Below, one piece after another: positions 23,021-32,000 of a DNA stretch of 64,000 bases (position 1 is its first letter; every line of letters begins with the position of its first letter). The position numbers and the translations under genes were made by a program. Origin of the DNA: Glycera tridactyla (lineage: Eukaryota); contig OZ286469.1 of assembly GCA_965644265.1 (NCBI GenBank), positions 64,604,001 through 64,668,000 on the forward strand, given 5' to 3'. Below the pieces are notes generated by a model. That model did no database searches and was not told the DNA's origin. It worked only from the letters and a program-made list of their open reading frames with translations.

Positions 23021-26000
23021 CTGTAACACAGCATCAACGATACCCACATAAGTCCCATCAAGTTCATCCACACGGACCCACACACAAAGTTCATTCAAAA
23101 ATAAAAGGTATATATGATCAAAGTATTATTCAGCTACTTTGGAATGACAATTGTGACGTTTTGGCAACGTTTCGACCATCCATCTAGTGGCCTTGGTCAG
23201 ATGATGGGTTTTGTAGCCCGGTGTCACATGACCAACGCCACTGGAAGACTTGTCGAAATGTCAATTTGGGTTTGAAAATGAATGAAAAATACTTTGATCA
23301 TGGATCATCTTGGAACTAAAATGAACATATCAACAAAAGATATATAGTTCCACAATTCCTAGAAAATCCTGCAGACTGACATTCACACTGACCAAATACT
23401 CAAATGTCCTTTCTGGTGACCTAAATGCAGCACATCATATCATTGATCTTGTATGGGAAGTTTGACATAATCTTTCCAAGTGTTTAGTCAATTTTGGTTT
23501 TCTGTATGCTCAAAATATTTGAATGATTCAGAGTAATCAATCGAGTTTTGATCAGATTCATATGCATGTCAAATATATTCCTGCTGTATGATAATGACTT
23601 GAATAAAGCGAACCTTGGCCCACCATCAGAGATTCTCTGAAGTGACAATATTTCACCAAATTCAAGTGTTTGATCACTAATGTAAGTTCACTAAATTTTG
23701 GATGGCCATTTCAGCTATGATTGAGCTTATAGTAGAAACTTGGATCATGCTCCAATGTATATGACAAGTGAAGCAAGCTAATTGGTCTATGAGGAAGAGG
23801 CTTGTCGGATACATGGTGGGCTGACAAGACATGTCTGTATGATAATGCAATATAATGTGCATAAGTAACAATAGATAACTTATAAATAATAGGAAGTGAA
23901 ATACCTGATCAACTCTGGCAAAATTCACATGATCTTCCAGAGAAGAAAAAACATACTCACCAACCAACTTCTGAATGATCCCAGTTCAGTAATGAATCCC
24001 TTCTGNNNNNNNNNNNNNNNNNNNNNNNNNNNNNNNNNNNNNNNNNNNNNNNNNNNNNNNNNNNNNNNNNNNNNNNNNNNNNNNNNNNNNNNNNNNNNNN
24101 NNNNNNNNNNNNNNNNNNNNNNNNNNNNNNNNNNNNNNNNNNNNNNNNNNNNNNNNGGAGTTGCAAGCTCCACTGAGAAGAAACTAAGGGCTGAGCCTTG
24201 TTCCTATATTACCTGTACATACCTGTGACACCAACAGCAATGAGTACTCCTGGTCTGCTACTTTCTATGGTTTTGAGTAGAAAAGTGTTAAAAAACTCAC
24301 CCAATGCTTGCTATTCCCACCAGTTGGACAGATCCATCACTTACCTAACTACACCGACATTGTCCCGATTTCTGATATGATATGATGTGATATGATATGA
24401 TATATATCAATGGAGCCACTGAACTCATACAGAATTTCCTGAGTCATAATCAAATTTATGGGAAATACTTGATTTGAAAGTTTCAGTATGATTCCACATT
24501 TCGCTTTTGCAAGTCTGAAAGCAGAGAAGTTCCACAAAAAGTGGCCTCACTGTATATGATATAACCTAAGAACAAGAACCACCCTTCAGGTACTAACCAT
24601 TCATCAATGGACAGAGGAAGTCTTTCAGACTATACATACACAATAGACTCTGTCTGAGGACTGGTTTCTGCTCAAGGGGTGGTTTTTGTTCAAGAGGTTG
24701 GCAAAAATGTAGAAATAAAATCACACAAATGGCTAATGATGACCACTAAAAAATGAGAAAGATGAAAAATGATTCATGAATGAAATATTGTGGGAAGAAT
24801 CTGGAAATGGTAAAACTCACCCCTGGTATCCATAGCCGGCTTGCTGCATATATGGTTGCATGTATCCGGGTGTCTGTTGAGCGGCCATTGTTTGCTGGTA
24901 ACCCTGGGGGTACCAGTAGCTCATCTGCCCCGCGTAGTAAGGTTGCCCGTAAGCTGCTTGACCAGCAAACTGCTGCTGAAACCAAACACAAAATTCACAC
25001 CAACTGTTTTAACAAGAATTCATCATTTATCCATACTGCAATCAGCAAGTAGATACATTTTCTATCCCCCCCCCCCCCCCCCCAAAAAAAAAGATAATTG
25101 AACAAAATGTTTAGCTGGATACAAGATCGATCTCTCAAGGTACAGGCTCAATACACAAAATCGGGGTCACTATTAAAATGAAGTTCGTTTGTTTGAGGTT
25201 TAACGGCATGTATCAACCCTAGGGTTATGTATGCCGTGCGTTCCTGGTTAATCAAAGCTAGATGTTCTCTCCCCTGCAGACATGAGGAAACAACTTCATG
25301 AGTTATATACATTTCAAGAATCATTCAACTGGAGAAATAGAGATCAAGATAAATGAGAGCGCAGACACATTTCATGTACACTCACACTTTAATGTGATGG
25401 GTACAAGAATCTTAGAGGATTATGACCAAATTTAAAGCAACAATTCACTGCAGACTATATTCCCTCCAACCCCTTTGTCTTATTACACATGAAAATCCTC
25501 CAAACAAATTTTCAATGATCATTCTATATTTGGTTAATAGAAGCATCATGCAGGGAGCACCAAGTGATTCCGATGAATATTGAAGTGAATTGACTTATTC
25601 TGCCCCATGCAATATAAGATAGTTCAGTAAGAGAACAGGAAGTGTGGTTATATGATTTTGAAAAAATTATGTAAAAAGCACAAAGAATTATCACTCAAAA
25701 AAATCAATCAAGCTATTGATATTCTTGAGTCTTTAGCAGAAGGCAACCACAAGTGTTGAAAACCACTCTTCCTAATTCCATTTTCACTTCCATGATATTC
25801 TATTATCACTCCTCAATCCAGTGGCATTGATGATGAAGTTATACCTTGGATGATACCATGAGTAACAATTGGGCAAGCTTCTGAAGAATTCAAAAGTTTC
25901 TAGTCACCAGACATGTCTCCATCCTAAAGAGATACAGGGGTCTGGCTTGGGATAAAAACTAACTTCATTTCAGAGTTATATTTGGGTGAAATGAGATACA

Positions 26001-29000
26001 GTGAAACCTGTCACAAAAGGCCCCTCACCAAGAGACCACCTCTGATGGGAGACTGCTTCTTGACATAGTCAAATATGCCTCTGAAGAGAGATCACCTCTT
26101 TTGAGACCATATTTTGGAGACATTTGGGGCCAGTCTCTCTTCGCAGATTCACTTTATTGTGTGAAAAGGCATGACATAACATAGTTCTATGGTTACACTG
26201 GACCAAATGTACAGCTCACACTTGACTCATAGATGTTCAACAACTGCTATTCTTGTTGAATTTTTGACAGACAAATTGTCACCATCCCCAGCTAACCATA
26301 TAGTCACCACATTTCTGAATTTCTGAATTTAATAGAATATTCAAACTCATTAGACAACTGGTTAAAAGGCTAAAAACAAGGAAGCCGGTCCCCCACCTGC
26401 ATGTATACATACACCATTCATACACAAGTCAATCATAGTGTCTTAATAAGAAAGCATAACCACTAGCGGGGCTGTGGATAGATCTAGTGATTTGTCAGAA
26501 CAAGGGCAACACAGGGTTATCTAGGACATTATACCACAGATAGAGCCAAATTCATTAAAGAAATATATTAGATATCAAAAGAAATATATGCTATTTTCTC
26601 ACGGATAGAAAATGCAATGTATATAACAAGCTCAAAATGCCTCATCTGTGGTATGAAAGAGAGAGACTGTGATTAGGAAATTGAATTACCATATCCGACA
26701 AGAGAAATACTGCTATGTGTATTACACTCATCTTACGACCATGCGGAAATTTCATAGCAATCATGCTCATTCGCTGGACATGGTAACGCTATCTGATAAT
26801 CACAGTTCCTGACTATAATGTCCCAAGTTAGCAAATCCAACCACCAGGCAAACATGGAACACAAAATGAAACAGATGCTGTATGTTGAATTGAATATTTC
26901 AGTTGACTGTGATACAGCCTGCTGAATATTTGTAGAAAAAAAATGAAAAAATATATATACAAGTGAAAATTCAAATGCTTCAGAATTGCACTGAATTTTT
27001 TGTCAAAGCGTATGAAATAAATCCTTTATAAGCAGATAGAAAGTATTCATTCACTAATATTATGTATGAAGTGAAAAAAGCTTGAATGATTAAAAAAATA
27101 CTTTAAAAAAAGCACAATTCCAGAAGTATGTTCACAGTTCATGTATCTCATTTTTGTGTGGGTATCAGGGTTTGTAAGTGTGAGGAAGGGGGAGGGGTGT
27201 CGGGGAAACCATCACAATCACCGAAATCTAGCGTACTCCCAACTAAGTCAATGGTACATCAATCAAGCCTCAAGAGAAGAGTCTGAAGTAACTGTCTATA
27301 ATGACCTGATAATGACTACTGTTATCTAGCTAGGTAATTTTCATTTTCAGGATTGAAATCTTTTGAGCAAGTCCTCATTTTTTTCATGTCATGTGATCAA
27401 GTCATGTGATTCCAACACTGCCCTATGAGTGGTGATTCTTGGTCACATGGCATGCATACAATGCAGTGATTGGCTGATTATGAAAGGCCATTTGGCATGC
27501 AGTTTGTACACTAATCAACAAGAATCCCCCTCACTCTCAATGGTATAACGCAACTACAATGTAGCAATTTTATAAACTCAACTTTGATCAGAAGCTTCGG
27601 GGAAATCACAACCGGCAAAAGTATTCTGATAATCTCTGAATCTATCTCTGATATCTTCCCCAATGTATTAGTGGCTTGCATATTCTGAATACTGACCAAA
27701 TTCCATATTATTTTCGCCAGATTGGGCCAAGAATATTTGGGATTGAAGCCAGAATATACTTGATAGCAAGGCCAGGGTGGGTAACAAAGGGACCTCCCCT
27801 GGAAGAGGCCCTCAAGATAGGATGATTTCTTGGATGTGGCTGAATTGCGGGTTCCACTACTGCAATATAAAGCAACCTTGAGATGAAATTTTTAGGGATT
27901 GCTGCCAATATAGTATATTCAATTGTGATCCAAAAATAATCTGAAGTCATCCATATGTGTTAAACATATTGGTTTCAGTCACATGAAGGTCATATTGTAC
28001 TGGGGTATGTATGATACAGATCAAGGTTATAAGTGTGAAGTAGTATGACTATTTCATTCCATCAATCAATATATCTGAGGTAAAAAAGCATGACATCATA
28101 GTTCTTTGGTAGAGAAAACCATCTCCAAGAATGTTGTTTCCGTATAGGAATGACCTAATGAAATCCTGCCATGTTAACCACCTCATATGTTCTGTAGCTC
28201 TGACTGGAAATTACATTCTTAGTACACAATATCATTCATTGTAATATACTGATGATGACAAAATATGAGCGCCAACCATGATGCCTATTATGTGTATTAT
28301 ATCCAAAGATTACAGCTGATGTTGGCTCAATGGGATAAATTTTTGTGCGAAAACCACCATCTCTACAGATTGCTGTGAGGACAAAAAATATACAAAGCAA
28401 CTTTTGAATGCTTGGTGGTTGTGAGATTGAATGATTATCATCCATACAATCTTAGCAGCAGGCTTCAATTCAATCTAATGCATCATATTATCATTATAAC
28501 TGCTTAAATATCCAAACGGCATTCCAGAACAGTTAATGCCAACTAGAAACAAACACATCAGCAAGATAACAGGTATTAGTTTGAATATGTGTTACTCTTA
28601 ACTGCGTAACAGGATAGTCAGAAGGTCAAACGGGAGTCATGGTCAAAGGACGGACCTCTAGAATTTCTGGATGCAGGTTAGAAGTTTGGTTTCAACCATA
28701 CAACTAAGTAAGGTATTGAGAACACTCTTGGTTTCTTCTTACAACTAACTACGAACACCTGAGATACTTAATACTACCCAGAAATGTGAGACTACTGATG
28801 CCCTTGAATCTTTCCGACACTCATCATGGATACCCTGTCATGAATTACTTAGTATTTTTAAATTTTTTGATTCATAATGAATGTGACAACTTCCAATGCT
28901 CTTAGGAAGCTCACGATACTCACAGTTATCGTTGAAAACAAGAAGCTCTCAGAGATCCAATGCAATTCCATCATAGAGAGCTTTCAATTCATTGTTTATT

Positions 29001-32000
29001 TTTGCATACACAAATGTGTTCTCCTTTGCCTTGTAACTAAGCTAGCATTATCAAAGAGAGTGAGCTACCGATGAAATATGGTGGAGAAAATGGATCGGAA
29101 ATAACAAAAATAATCCAGTGATCATGCAATGCTTGTTGAAGCGACTACCTCTTTTCATTTTTTCACACTGAATACAAGAACTGCCAAATCATAATAGCAC
29201 TAATAAAATATGAAAATAATAATGAAACGATAGTGACCGCAGCATGCTGATTACAAATCAAATAGGCATTTATCCGAATTATAAATGACTGATCTGGCAG
29301 ATAACTGATCTGGAACATGACTGGCATGCAATACTTCAGTTTCGCCATAACAAAAAAAATTTCTCGATTAGACCTACGGTTTGTATTTCACTGACTAACT
29401 GGGATAATTATGTGTGCTGCTGGCGATAAAATAAGATTCAAATCGGCATTGTTGCTATCGTCTACGTATGAGCAGTAATGTGAATGGTTAGTGAGTATTA
29501 CGGGAGGATAGGTGTTGGGCGAGCAAAGGCACGAGCGGCGGTGAGTTTGGCAAACTCGCAGTAAAGAGGTGTGAAGGAGAGATGATATTGAACTGTGAAC
29601 ATACTTGTGCTTGGGTTTGTGCTGCCGCAGCACCTCCGGGTGGCACATTGACGCCCCCGGCACTCACCGGCTGGGTGGCAACAGTGGTTGCTCCCTGCGC
29701 CACTGGGCTGGCGTTTTGACTGGGATCACTGGATTCTTTTCCCCATGAGCATTTCACTGTATGGCCATTAATTTCTGTACCATGCACAGAGACAATAGCC
29801 TGTGTTGCTGCTTCTTTTGTTGAAAACCTTGAAAACAGAAGAAAACAAACATTAAATCAGACTGAAGACCAAGCATGAAATTTGCATAACATACATACAA
29901 TTACGATCCATACGTCAAACATGCATCAAAAACCGCGAAAATCTGGAATACTACCTCTCCCTGTCATACAAGATGCTCATCACCAAGAACAAGGTCATAC
30001 GGCCATTATATGGAAGCCATGTACAACCATAGGTTTTTTTTTTCTTCTTTTTTTTATATACAAGCATAGTTGAGATGACCTTGATTGATTGATTGATTGA
30101 TTGACTGATTGAGCAATGTTCATGACAGATTGGAGACAGAGCCATATATCTCCATTGATTTGATCACCTTTAAGAAACATTTTTGTCATATTTATGCGAA
30201 CTAGACTGGCAACTGTTGCATGTGCACTGTGTATCAAATCAGGTTCATATAAGGATGGTTTTACAGAATTTGGAATTTCTAGATTAATGTGAGCCATCGA
30301 TTAGGTGGCACCAGAAGATGTGAACAGGAAACATGGACGTAGAGCCACTGACTCGAGGCAGTCCATTGTTACAGGTGATCGGCGAATTAATCACAAGCTT
30401 GCGCTCTTAGAATACAGCAAATCGCCGTCCTGTCCAAGCGCCTTCGTTGCAACCGCCATGCAAGGACGAGATACGTTTAAGCCGTGATGACCCCGTGACC
30501 CACGCAATACATGTTGGTCATCATCAAACGCCTATCATTTGTTTCCGTGTGACACTACCGTCTATTTCCACGTATAATGAACCTCCCATCATCCATCAAA
30601 CGCAAAGGTCATTGACGATCAGGGTTCCACATGCCTCAATTTATGCAAGCTTTATCGTCAGCTTTTAATATTTGATGGGATGTAGCCATTTGTCTTTTAA
30701 TATCGCCTGCGTGATGATTAATAGAGGAAAATTTAATGAGCCGCAGCCAATACATGGTCGCTTGCAACATGCTTTAATAATCTGTATGTAAACATGAGCA
30801 AATACTGCAACCAACTGCAGGAATTGAGAGATTTCCGCATTCATTTATCATTGCTGACTTTAGAAATAGAATGAATGGGGTGATAAGATGGACATTCAAA
30901 CCTGTGGTGTACAAATCTGATACAAGAAAGTCAATGATTGTGTATGTAGGAACATTCAACATTCAAAGCATCATCTGAGTCACCAATGTCTTTCAAGATA
31001 TTGTCAAATATTCTCACACATGTAGAGGCACAGAAAGAAGTTCACAATAGGAGCAACTTCATCTCAATTTTGGTACAGAACAGCAATAATTCTTATCACT
31101 TGATCTTTCCTTCTGTGGACAATTTGATTTCTGCATCAGCACTTCAGTGAAGCCTAGTACCTTCTGTGGACAATTGGATCTCTGAATATGCACAGCATTG
31201 GATCCTGGTATTTTGTGTGGACAATTTGTTCTCTGAATCTGCAGTGAACAGGATCCTAGAATTATCTCCAGATAATTTGATCTCTGATTCCACAGTGCAT
31301 TGGCACTTAATACTTCCTGTAGACCATCGGATCTCAGAAGTCTTTGGCACTGTAAGCCAAGCTGGAAGGCACATAACTTTGAGAGTGGTATGTACAACCA
31401 TATATATTATGCACAAAGGCACAGACTTTTCAATGTACTTCGATCTGATTGAATAATCTGGCAAAGTCAAAAGTGTAGAATGGTACATAAAAACTGCATC
31501 AATGTGACAAATGGCACATCTTCTTTGGTCAGTAAATCCCTAATTTATTTGAAAATCAGGATGCCTCGGATGCCTCAGGATTTTGATGTCTCAGTCCAAC
31601 GAAATGCCCAGCAGTTATAAATACTACTCATGGTATGAATTTAGAATTTAGAATTAGAATCAGGTGCTCCATCAAGCTGAGAAGATGATATCAGCATGGA
31701 CACATCAGATAATCTGGAACAAGCTTCTGAACACTGCATATGTTAGTAGCCACGCGTCAATATCATCACTAATATTGATGAAGCTAGCCAGCTCCACTCA
31801 TTTGTTTCATAAATCAATACTGTCACAACTCGTACATNNNNNNNNNNNNNNNNNNNNNNNNNNNNNNNNNNNNNNNNNNNNNNNNNNNNNNNNNNNNNNN
31901 NNNNNNNNNNNNNNNNNNNNNNNNNNNNNNNNNNNNNNNNNNNNNNNNNNNNNNNNNNNNNNNNNNNNNNNNNNNNNNNNNNNNNNNNNNNNNNNNNNNN

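What the first reader, a model, noticed from the sequence alone, without database searches (positions are those of the whole stretch)
27124..29606. Perfect 18-nt long-range complement covers the distal alternative 5' splice site of the RRM3 exon
Seen: in the pre-mRNA (minus strand), AAGUAUGUUCACAGUUCA (29606-29589) spans the distal donor CAA|GUAUGU. Its exact complement UGAACUGUGAACAUACUU lies about 2.45 kb downstream in the same intron (27141-27124). Pairing can extend on the exon side (AAGCAC, across an 8-nt bulge) and on the intron side (AUCUC, across a small internal loop). A specific 18-mer has a 1 in 4^18 (about 7x10^10) chance per position, so a hit inside a 4.6-kb intron on top of a splice site is very unlikely by chance. 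The flanks are not a repeat family I recognise. Established: long-range intronic duplexes control splice-site choice (e.g. Dscam1 docking/selector sites). Inference: the duplex hides the distal donor from U1 and sets inclusion of 21 aa at the RRM3/prion-like-domain boundary. I do not know of this being described for a TIA-1 family gene.
Basis: partly seen in the sequence, partly recalled or inferred. Interest (0 to 1): 0.8.

Follow-up and report, generated by a model that had tools for sequence, protein, structure and literature searches.

The report
Inverted repeat covering an alternative splice donor
An annelid TIA-1/TIAR gene has an exact 18-base reverse-complement copy of one of its two truly used alternative splice donors 2.4 kb further into the same intron; the resulting RNA helix could hide that donor, but nothing yet shows that it forms or was selected, and it looks most like a small copying accident.

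Summary
27124-27141 (+) is the exact reverse complement of 29589-29606, and 20 of 21 bases pair if the arms are extended. One arm covers positions -2 to +16 of the downstream donor CAA|GTATGT of the RRM3 exon of a minus-strand TIA-1/TIAR gene. Spliced transcript contigs confirm both donors: 29668>24972 in one run and 29605>24972 in another. The contigs use acceptor 24972, not 24975. The difference between the isoforms is 63 nt, or 21 aa.

The regulatory reading is unproven.
- The helix wins against local structure (pair probability 0.73-1.0, at least 0.95 for 16 of the 18 pairs; net -19 kcal/mol). It is absent from the global 5-kb minimum-energy fold, where forcing it costs +10.8 kcal/mol.
- The supposedly hidden donor is used in at least one of four assemblies, and probably a second.
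- No genome close enough to align this intron could be found. The two relatives reached share only exons.
- Closer relatives' cDNAs show the donor position drifting (+9, +27 or +63 nt), so the arm is lineage-specific.
- This window holds three exact inverted repeats of 17 nt or more within 5 kb, against about 0.1 expected. Overlap with a splice site is therefore not significant across a genome scan.

Earlier notes on this genome describe frequent splice-junction duplications and an intronic inverted repeat judged a relic. My best reading is a short inverted copying event that created a potential, at most partial, donor mask.

The parts
29589..29606 (-). Arm 1: 18 nt spanning positions -2 to +16 of the downstream alternative 5' splice site (CAA|GTATGT...)
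   Evidence: exact reverse complement of 27124-27141.
27124..27141 (-). Arm 2: the intronic exact complement (UGAACUGUGAACAUACUU in the pre-mRNA). It lies 2447 nt downstream of arm 1 and about 2.15 kb upstream of the acceptor.
   Evidence: I3. No other copy of its flanks occurs in the 64-kb window.
27121..27123 (-). Three-base extension of arm 2. It pairs with 29607-29609 as two pairs plus one C.C mismatch.
   Evidence: I3 (21 nt, 95% complementary); energy -26.9 against -26.2 kcal/mol.
29668..29827 (-). Constitutive part of the exon encoding the end of RRM3 and the linker ([31 protein letters not shown]...TQP). It ends at the upstream donor CCG|GTGAGT.
   Evidence: The X2 contig joins 29668 to 24972.
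29605..29667 (-). 63-nt alternative extension (21 aa, [21 protein letters not shown]), included when the downstream donor is used.
   Evidence: X1 record 1 joins 29605 to 24972. X5 record 30 ends 3 non-intron letters after 29605.
24973..29604 (-). The intron: 4632 nt from the downstream donor, 4695 nt from the upstream donor.
   Evidence: joint 24972/29668 skips 4695 with GT..AG ends. Table 8 record 1 gives the other junction.
24821..24972 (-). Next exon ([13 protein letters not shown]...GYGYQG), the start of the Q/Y/G-rich prion-like tail. Its acceptor is a NAGNAG.

Best explanation
A short inverted copy of the downstream-donor junction sits 2.45 kb further into the same intron of an annelid TIA-1/TIAR gene. 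It is 18 nt exact and 20 of 21 with the extension.

Origin (inferred): one small inverted copying event of the template-switch or templated-repair kind, not stepwise selection for pairing.

Consequence (inferred from thermodynamics): the pre-mRNA can form a helix of about -26 kcal/mol. This would bury the U1 binding site of the weaker, downstream donor and favour the stronger upstream donor, giving the isoform without the 21-aa linker insert.

Shown: the repeat exists, both donors are used, and the helix beats local competing structure in silico.

Not shown: that the helix forms in vivo, that it changes the isoform ratio, or that selection maintains it. I take it as a young, lineage-specific by-product that at most partially damps the downstream donor.
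For: - Exactness and sharp boundaries. All 18 pairs are Watson-Crick with no G.U, and flank similarity is at chance. This is the signature of copying rather than convergent evolution of pairing. Template switching is documented to create perfect inverted repeats and RNA hairpins (PMC5453318, PMC8794818).
- Background. This window has three exact inverted repeats of 17 nt or more within 5 kb, against about 0.1 in nulls. One is another orphan 19-nt pair 2256 nt apart.
- Earlier notes of this scan report frequent duplications of splice junctions in this genome. I did not test them.
- Lineage specificity. cDNAs of closer relatives read GTC AGT GCA through the site of the window's upstream donor and splice 9 or 27 nt later. 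More distant relatives use only the upstream position. The +63 donor, and hence its copy, is therefore young.
- Masking is plausible. The 18 bp give -26.2 kcal/mol. The donor region binds the arm-2 region at -42.6 kcal/mol, against -28.4 for the next best place in the intron. Pair probabilities are 0.73-1.0 (at least 0.95 for 16 of the 18 pairs), with a net gain of -19.4 kcal/mol, when two 321-nt fragments fold together. Modelled U1 pairing is -4.0 at this donor and -10.2 at the upstream one.
- Masking is only partial. The downstream donor is used in X1 and probably X5. The X4 contig holds the 63-nt extension but ends 6 nt into the intron, so it shows no junction.
Against: - Documented template-switch events are mostly local, over tens to hundreds of bases, not 2.45 kb (PMC5453318).
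- No outgroup lacking arm 2 could be examined, so the direction and age of the copying are not shown.
- That one arm falls exactly on a confirmed alternative donor of a splicing regulator is what a selected element would look like.
- The bin holding arm 2 (27048-27229) has contig depth of about 2.4-3.2 in 3 of 4 runs with no differences listed. This could hint at a stable or conserved segment.
- The global 5-kb fold omits the helix, with a +10.8 kcal/mol cost to force it. That argues against any effect at all, though such folds are unreliable.
Confidence: 0.5

Rival explanations
1. Selected regulatory element: an evolved long-range cis duplex acts as a U1 decoy. It competes with U1 for the weak downstream donor and so sets, perhaps by tissue or transcription speed, how often the 21-aa linker insert is included between RRM3 and the prion-like tail.
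For: - The exact 18-nt complement sits on a confirmed alternative donor.
- The helix is far stronger than U1 pairing at that donor and survives local competition.
- Different samples of one study assembled different isoforms, X1 long and X2 short.
- Structures that obstruct splice sites are a known class (PMC8052449, PMC3783185, PMC2724269).
Against: - There is no conservation evidence. Relatives' introns do not align, and their donor regions have only 10-nt, chance-level complements.
- The extension differs in length among relatives (3, 9 or 21 aa) and is low-complexity, which suggests weak constraint.
- A perfect helix with no G.U pairs points to recent copying.
- The empirical background of inverted repeats makes overlap with some splice site expected in a scan.
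- Even conserved complementary regions have false discovery rates of 10-50% (PMC8052449).
- The masked donor is commonly used.
Confidence: 0.2
2. Arm 2 belongs to a dispersed repeat or transposon fragment that happens to contain a sequence complementary to a splice-donor-like motif. The match to the donor is then incidental.
For: - The intron holds other dispersed repeats: 25183-25283, hugely abundant in RNA contigs, and 25996-26160 with copies elsewhere in the window.
- A third 16/18 match to the 18-mer lies at 2891-2908.
- The bin with arm 2 is covered in 3 of 4 runs.
Against: - The flanks of arm 2 have no other copy in the 64-kb window.
- The third match shares nothing beyond the 18 nt.
- There is no Rfam hit.
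- The rest of the genome could not be searched.
Confidence: 0.1
3. Pure coincidence of two unrelated sequences.
For: Very many windows were scanned. The AAGTATGT part is a common donor-like motif.
Against: - Expected exact occurrences of a given 18-mer in this window are about 2e-6.
- The tool's shuffles give 0.02 matches even with 2 mismatches allowed.
- Markov nulls give 0.025 inverted repeats of 18 nt within 5 kb per window.
Confidence: 0.05

Closest known systems
Human conserved complementary regions in introns (PCCRs; Kalmykova et al. 2021, PMC8052449)
   Same: These are long-range intronic base pairings near splice sites. Helices overlapping a splice site are generally obstructive, and such regions are enriched at weakly used or cryptic sites.
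   Different: PCCRs are defined by conservation across vertebrates, which could not be tested here. This helix is perfect, AT-rich (33% GC) and overlaps a donor that is actually used.
SMN2 intron 7 ISTL1 long-distance interaction (Singh et al. 2013, PMC3783185)
   Same: An intra-intronic long-distance pairing inhibits inclusion of SMN2 exon 7. Blocking the 3' strand with an antisense oligonucleotide relieves the inhibition, which is the same experiment that would test this case.
   Different: From my own recollection, not read here: ISTL1 is a short stem whose 5' strand starts just after the exon 7 donor and whose arms lie a few hundred nucleotides apart. Here the helix is 18 bp over 2.45 kb and covers the donor itself. 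ISTL1 controls exon skipping, not a choice between two donors.
Fungal TPP riboswitch control of alternative 5' splice sites by long-distance pairing (Li and Breaker 2013, PMC3597705)
   Same: The choice among alternative 5' splice sites is governed by pairing between an intronic element and a sequence next to a 5' splice site, about 530 nt away.
   Different: There the partner is part of a ligand-binding aptamer, and the pairing increases use of the site. No aptamer or Rfam family is present here, and the expected effect is occlusion.
Dscam1 docking/selector and other Drosophila long-range structures (PMC2724269, PMC12962786)
   Same: Kilobase-range intronic RNA pairing decides the splicing outcome.
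   Different: There is no set of competing selector sites. The donor region has a single strong partner, and the next exact complement is 12 nt. The event is alternative donors, not mutually exclusive exons. No deep conservation is shown.
Template-switch mutations that create perfect inverted repeats and RNA hairpins (Loytynoja and Goldman 2017, PMC5453318; PMC8794818)
   Same: A single event writes a reverse-complement copy of nearby sequence. This gives perfect stems with sharp boundaries and needs no selection.
   Different: Described events are short-range, within one replication fork. Here the arms are 2.45 kb apart, and the ancestral state is unknown.

Membership tests
Functional long-range RNA structure regulating splicing (PCCR-type) | Complementarity beyond chance between two regions of one pre-mRNA | tested here: met
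   18 nt exact. The next best in the 5-kb unit is 12 nt. Shuffles give 0.02 matches even with 2 mismatches allowed.
Functional long-range RNA structure regulating splicing (PCCR-type) | Conservation or compensatory substitutions of both arms in related species | not testable with these tools
   The only genomic relatives reached (L002, L003) align in exons only. A search with the exon read-through ORF found no closer genome. The closer relatives are cDNA only.
Functional long-range RNA structure regulating splicing (PCCR-type) | Overlap with, or looping of, a splice site whose use varies | tested here: met
   Contigs join 29668>24972 (X2) and 29605>24972 (X1).
Functional long-range RNA structure regulating splicing (PCCR-type) | Predicted to form against competing structures | tested here: inconclusive
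   Pair probabilities are 0.73-1.0 (at least 0.95 for 16 of the 18 pairs), with a -19.4 kcal/mol gain, in the two-fragment ensemble. The helix is absent from the global MFE of 5009 nt, and forcing it costs +10.8 kcal/mol.
Functional long-range RNA structure regulating splicing (PCCR-type) | Structure probing or mutation with compensatory rescue | not testable with these tools
   This needs a minigene, an antisense oligonucleotide, or DMS/PARIS data.
Dscam-like docking/selector system | One docking site with several competing selector sites | tested here: not met
   There is a single partner. Other intron segments reach only background duplex energies, -28 against -42.6 kcal/mol, and no second exact complement of 13 nt or more exists.
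Template-switch / short inverted duplication product | Perfect reverse-complement identity with abrupt boundaries | tested here: met
   18/18 Watson-Crick pairs and no G.U. Flank similarity p is about 0.10 and 0.21.
Template-switch / short inverted duplication product | Outgroup showing the ancestral state without the copy | not testable with these tools
   No alignable intron from a relative is available.
Template-switch / short inverted duplication product | Donor and copy close together (tens to hundreds of bases) | tested here: not met
   The arms are 2447 nt apart. A second orphan 19-nt inverted repeat in the window is 2256 nt apart.
TIA-1/TIAR family gene | RRM2 and RRM3 signature sequences followed by a Q/Y/G-rich tail | tested here: met
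   Window exons match TIA-1/TIAR-named proteins and annelid cDNAs at 70-100% identity. RRM1 lies outside the window.

The most novel reading that the evidence does not exclude
The helix is an evolved cis-acting U1 decoy in a lophotrochozoan TIA-1/TIAR gene. It competes with U1, and possibly with TIA-1 protein itself bound to the pyrimidine-rich stretch just after the donor, for a weak alternative donor. It would thereby tune the length of the linker between RRM3 and the prion-like domain, possibly depending on transcription speed or on autoregulation.
Probability: 0.15. Interest if true: 0.55.

Novelty: new member of a known kind. Interest (0 to 1): 0.33.

Why it matters
If the helix works, this would be a clean and easily testable case of a kilobase-range RNA duplex choosing between two 5' splice sites. 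It would sit in a gene that is itself a 5'-splice-site regulator and stress-granule protein, and in a phylum where such structures have hardly been studied. It would also show how a single copying accident can create a splicing switch. If the helix does not work, the case is a useful caution. In this repeat-prone genome, exact inverted repeats of about 18 nt are roughly 30 times more common than random models say, so a perfect complement on a splice site is not in itself evidence of regulation.

Tried and rejected
- Conservation test. I searched protein representatives with the exon, then fetched loci. P0002 and P0151 turned out to be cDNA contigs without introns. P0003 and P0004 gave genomic loci L002 and L003, but these are too distant, and only exons align. 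A search with the exon-plus-intron read-through ORF found no closer genome.\n- Analogous donor-masking complements in L002 and L003. The large -47.5 kcal/mol figure for 80-nt flanks is inflated by background, since the unrelated upstream-donor region reaches -38.9 with arbitrary intron segments.\n- U1 pseudogene idea for arm 2, which resembles the 5' end of U1. Rejected: any complement of a donor must resemble U1, and there is no Rfam hit.\n- Introner or repeat-family idea, prompted by the third 16/18 copy at 2891. The three sites share no flank similarity.\n- circRNA-promoting inverted repeat. Rejected because both arms lie in one intron and enclose no exon.\n- Read-level quantification. Only assembled contigs were available, so isoform ratios cannot be given.
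Full report
**1. Observation**

The 18-mer AAGTATGTTCACAGTTCA occurs on the + strand at 27124-27141 and on the - strand at 29606-29589, both without mismatch. With one C.C mismatch the complementarity runs to 21 nt, at 27121-27141 / 29589-29609, and 2447 nt lie between the arms (pair I3). In the 5-kb transcription unit segment 24821-29829 the next longest exact inverted repeat is 12 nt. The tool's dinucleotide shuffles expect 0.02 matches in the window even with two mismatches allowed.

**2. Gene and splice sites**

The minus strand carries the 3' two thirds of a TIA-1/TIAR homologue. RRM2 exons lie near 62.7 and 49.6 kb, a linker exon near 46.6 kb, RRM3 exons at 34.7 kb and 29827-29668, and Q/Y/G-rich tail exons at 24972-24821 and near 23.0 kb. 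Homologues are named nucleolysin TIA-1/TIAR. Earlier notes of this scan call the genome an annelid.

The RRM3 exon has two in-frame donors. The upstream one is CCG|GTGAGT, with the exon ending at 29668. The downstream one is CAA|GTATGT, with the exon ending at 29605. They are 63 nt apart, which encodes the 21 aa [21 protein letters not shown]. Arm 1 covers positions -2 to +16 of the downstream donor.

**3. RNA evidence (the one read-laying run allowed; assembled contigs only)**

- X2 record 8 (679 nt) joins 29668 directly to 24972, skipping 4695 nt with GT..AG ends.
- X1 record 1 (1186 nt) joins 29605 directly to 24972.
- X5 is from another study and another organism code. Its contig ends three letters beyond 29605, and those letters did not align to the intron. 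This fits the same junction.
- The X4 contig carries the extension and ends 6 nt into the intron.

Both donors are therefore real, and the supposedly hidden one is commonly assembled. The acceptor used is the second CAG of tttcagcag|CAG, at 24972, not 24975. Contigs cannot give ratios.

**4. Can the helix form?**

- The 18 bp are worth -26.2 kcal/mol. The donor region binds the arm-2 region at -42.6 kcal/mol, against -28.4 for the next best place in the intron.
- Modelled pairing to the U1 5' end is -4.0 kcal/mol for the downstream donor and -10.2 for the upstream one. If the helix forms, U1 cannot compete at that site.
- When 321-nt fragments around each arm fold together, all 18 pairs have probability 0.73-1.0 (at least 0.95 for 16 of the 18), and the net gain over separate folding is -19.4 kcal/mol.
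- The minimum-energy fold of the whole 5009-nt unit (-1298.3 kcal/mol) does not contain the helix. Forcing it gives -1287.5. Global folds of this size are unreliable, but the helix is not thermodynamically inevitable.
Anchored flank alignments give p of about 0.10 (exon side) and 0.21 (intron side) against random intron segments. The unrelated upstream-donor region reaches -38.9 kcal/mol with arbitrary intron pieces.

**5. Relatives**

A profile-free search with the exon and a word search with the closest full-length hit gave annelid cDNAs and two genomic loci.

L002 and L003 share only exons with the window. They use the upstream position (CCG|GTACGT and CCG|GTAAGT), as the protein P0154 confirms. 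Their donor regions have only 10-nt complements in the intron.

Two closer relatives are known only as cDNA (L001 and L004). Both read GTC AGT GCA (VSA) through the site where the window has GTGAGT, and both splice 9 or 27 nt further on. The donor position therefore drifts within this clade, and the insert is a low-complexity stretch of 3, 9 or 21 aa. The window species keeps both an ancestral upstream donor and a lineage-specific downstream one. The intronic 16 nt of arm 1 and all of arm 2 could not be compared with anything. A search with the exon read-through ORF found no closer genome.

**6. Background**

This window contains three exact, non-simple inverted repeats of 17 nt or more within 5 kb. 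They are 19 nt at 8929/11203 (2256 nt apart), the present 18 nt, and 17 nt inside a dispersed repeat. Markov-1 nulls give about 0.1. With that empirical rate, I estimate the chance that some arm overlaps one of the roughly 17 splice sites in the window at a few percent. Such overlaps are therefore expected several times among the hundreds of windows read in this genome.

Earlier notes in this scan describe frequent duplications of splice junctions here, and an intronic inverted repeat judged a relic. I did not test those notes. The flanks of arm 2 are single-copy within the window, and no Rfam family matches.

**7. Reading**

Perfect Watson-Crick identity without a single G.U pair, sharp boundaries and the inverted-repeat-rich background point to one short inverted copying event. 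Template switching is known to write such perfect stems (PMC5453318, PMC8794818), although usually over much shorter distances.

The helix this created is the kind known to obstruct splice sites (PMC8052449, PMC3783185), and long-distance pairing can steer alternative 5' splice sites (PMC3597705). A real but partial damping of the weak downstream donor is therefore plausible. Selection for it is not shown.

I give 0.5 to a young by-product with at most a modulatory effect, 0.2 to a selected regulator, 0.1 to a repeat fragment and 0.05 to pure coincidence.

**8. Limits**

- No raw reads were available.
- No close genome was available.
- No genome-wide copy count could be made.

Noticed in passing
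window 25183-25283: A dispersed repeat of about 100 nt with an internal palindrome. Summed contig depth is 5e4-9e4 across about 2000 contigs in all four runs. A/T-rich loose ends lie at 25183-25188, which suggests a SINE- or MITE-like element carried in many transcripts. A 31-nt exact copy lies at 7403-7433. There is no Rfam match.
   Followed up: partly
window 8929-8947 and 11203-11221: A second orphan exact inverted repeat, 19 nt, with arms 2256 nt apart and only weak flank similarity. It is the same kind and spacing as the finding, and serves as evidence of a mutational background of short long-range inverted copies.
   Followed up: partly
L002 12874-13023 and L003 11709-11854: In two more distant annelid relatives, the orthologous intron holds a block of about 150 nt that is 86% identical, more conserved than the flanking coding exons (about 80%). 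It reads as an in-frame cassette after an AG: 93 nt to CAA|GTGAAA, or 54 nt to CAG|GCAAGT. It has no Rfam hit and no counterpart in the window intron. It is a possible alternative or poison exon at the same RRM3/tail boundary.
   Followed up: partly
L001 and L004 (cDNAs of closer relatives), at the junction after KCSWGKE...: Both cDNAs carry GTC AGT GCA where the window has the strong donor GTG AGT GCC, and they splice 9 or 27 nt downstream. The donor has shifted in this clade, and the window species appears to retain both states.
   Followed up: yes
window 24972-24977: The acceptor is a NAGNAG (tttcagcag|CAG). Both spliced contigs use 24972. Use of 24975 would add one Gln.
   Followed up: partly
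window 29724-29740 and 29107-29123: A 16-of-17 complement between the RRM3 exon and the intron about 0.5 kb downstream of the donors. It is borderline beyond chance for this region and would loop out both donors.
   Followed up: no
window 2891-2908 (+): A 16/18 match to the 18-mer (AAGTAAGTTTACAGTTCA) that also looks like a donor on the + strand. It shares no flank similarity with either arm.
   Followed up: partly
window 27048-27229: The 182-nt bin that contains arm 2 has contig depth of 2.4-3.2 in three of four runs, with no differences listed. Most other intron bins are empty or covered in one run. The contigs themselves were not listed, so this stays unexplained.
   Followed up: no
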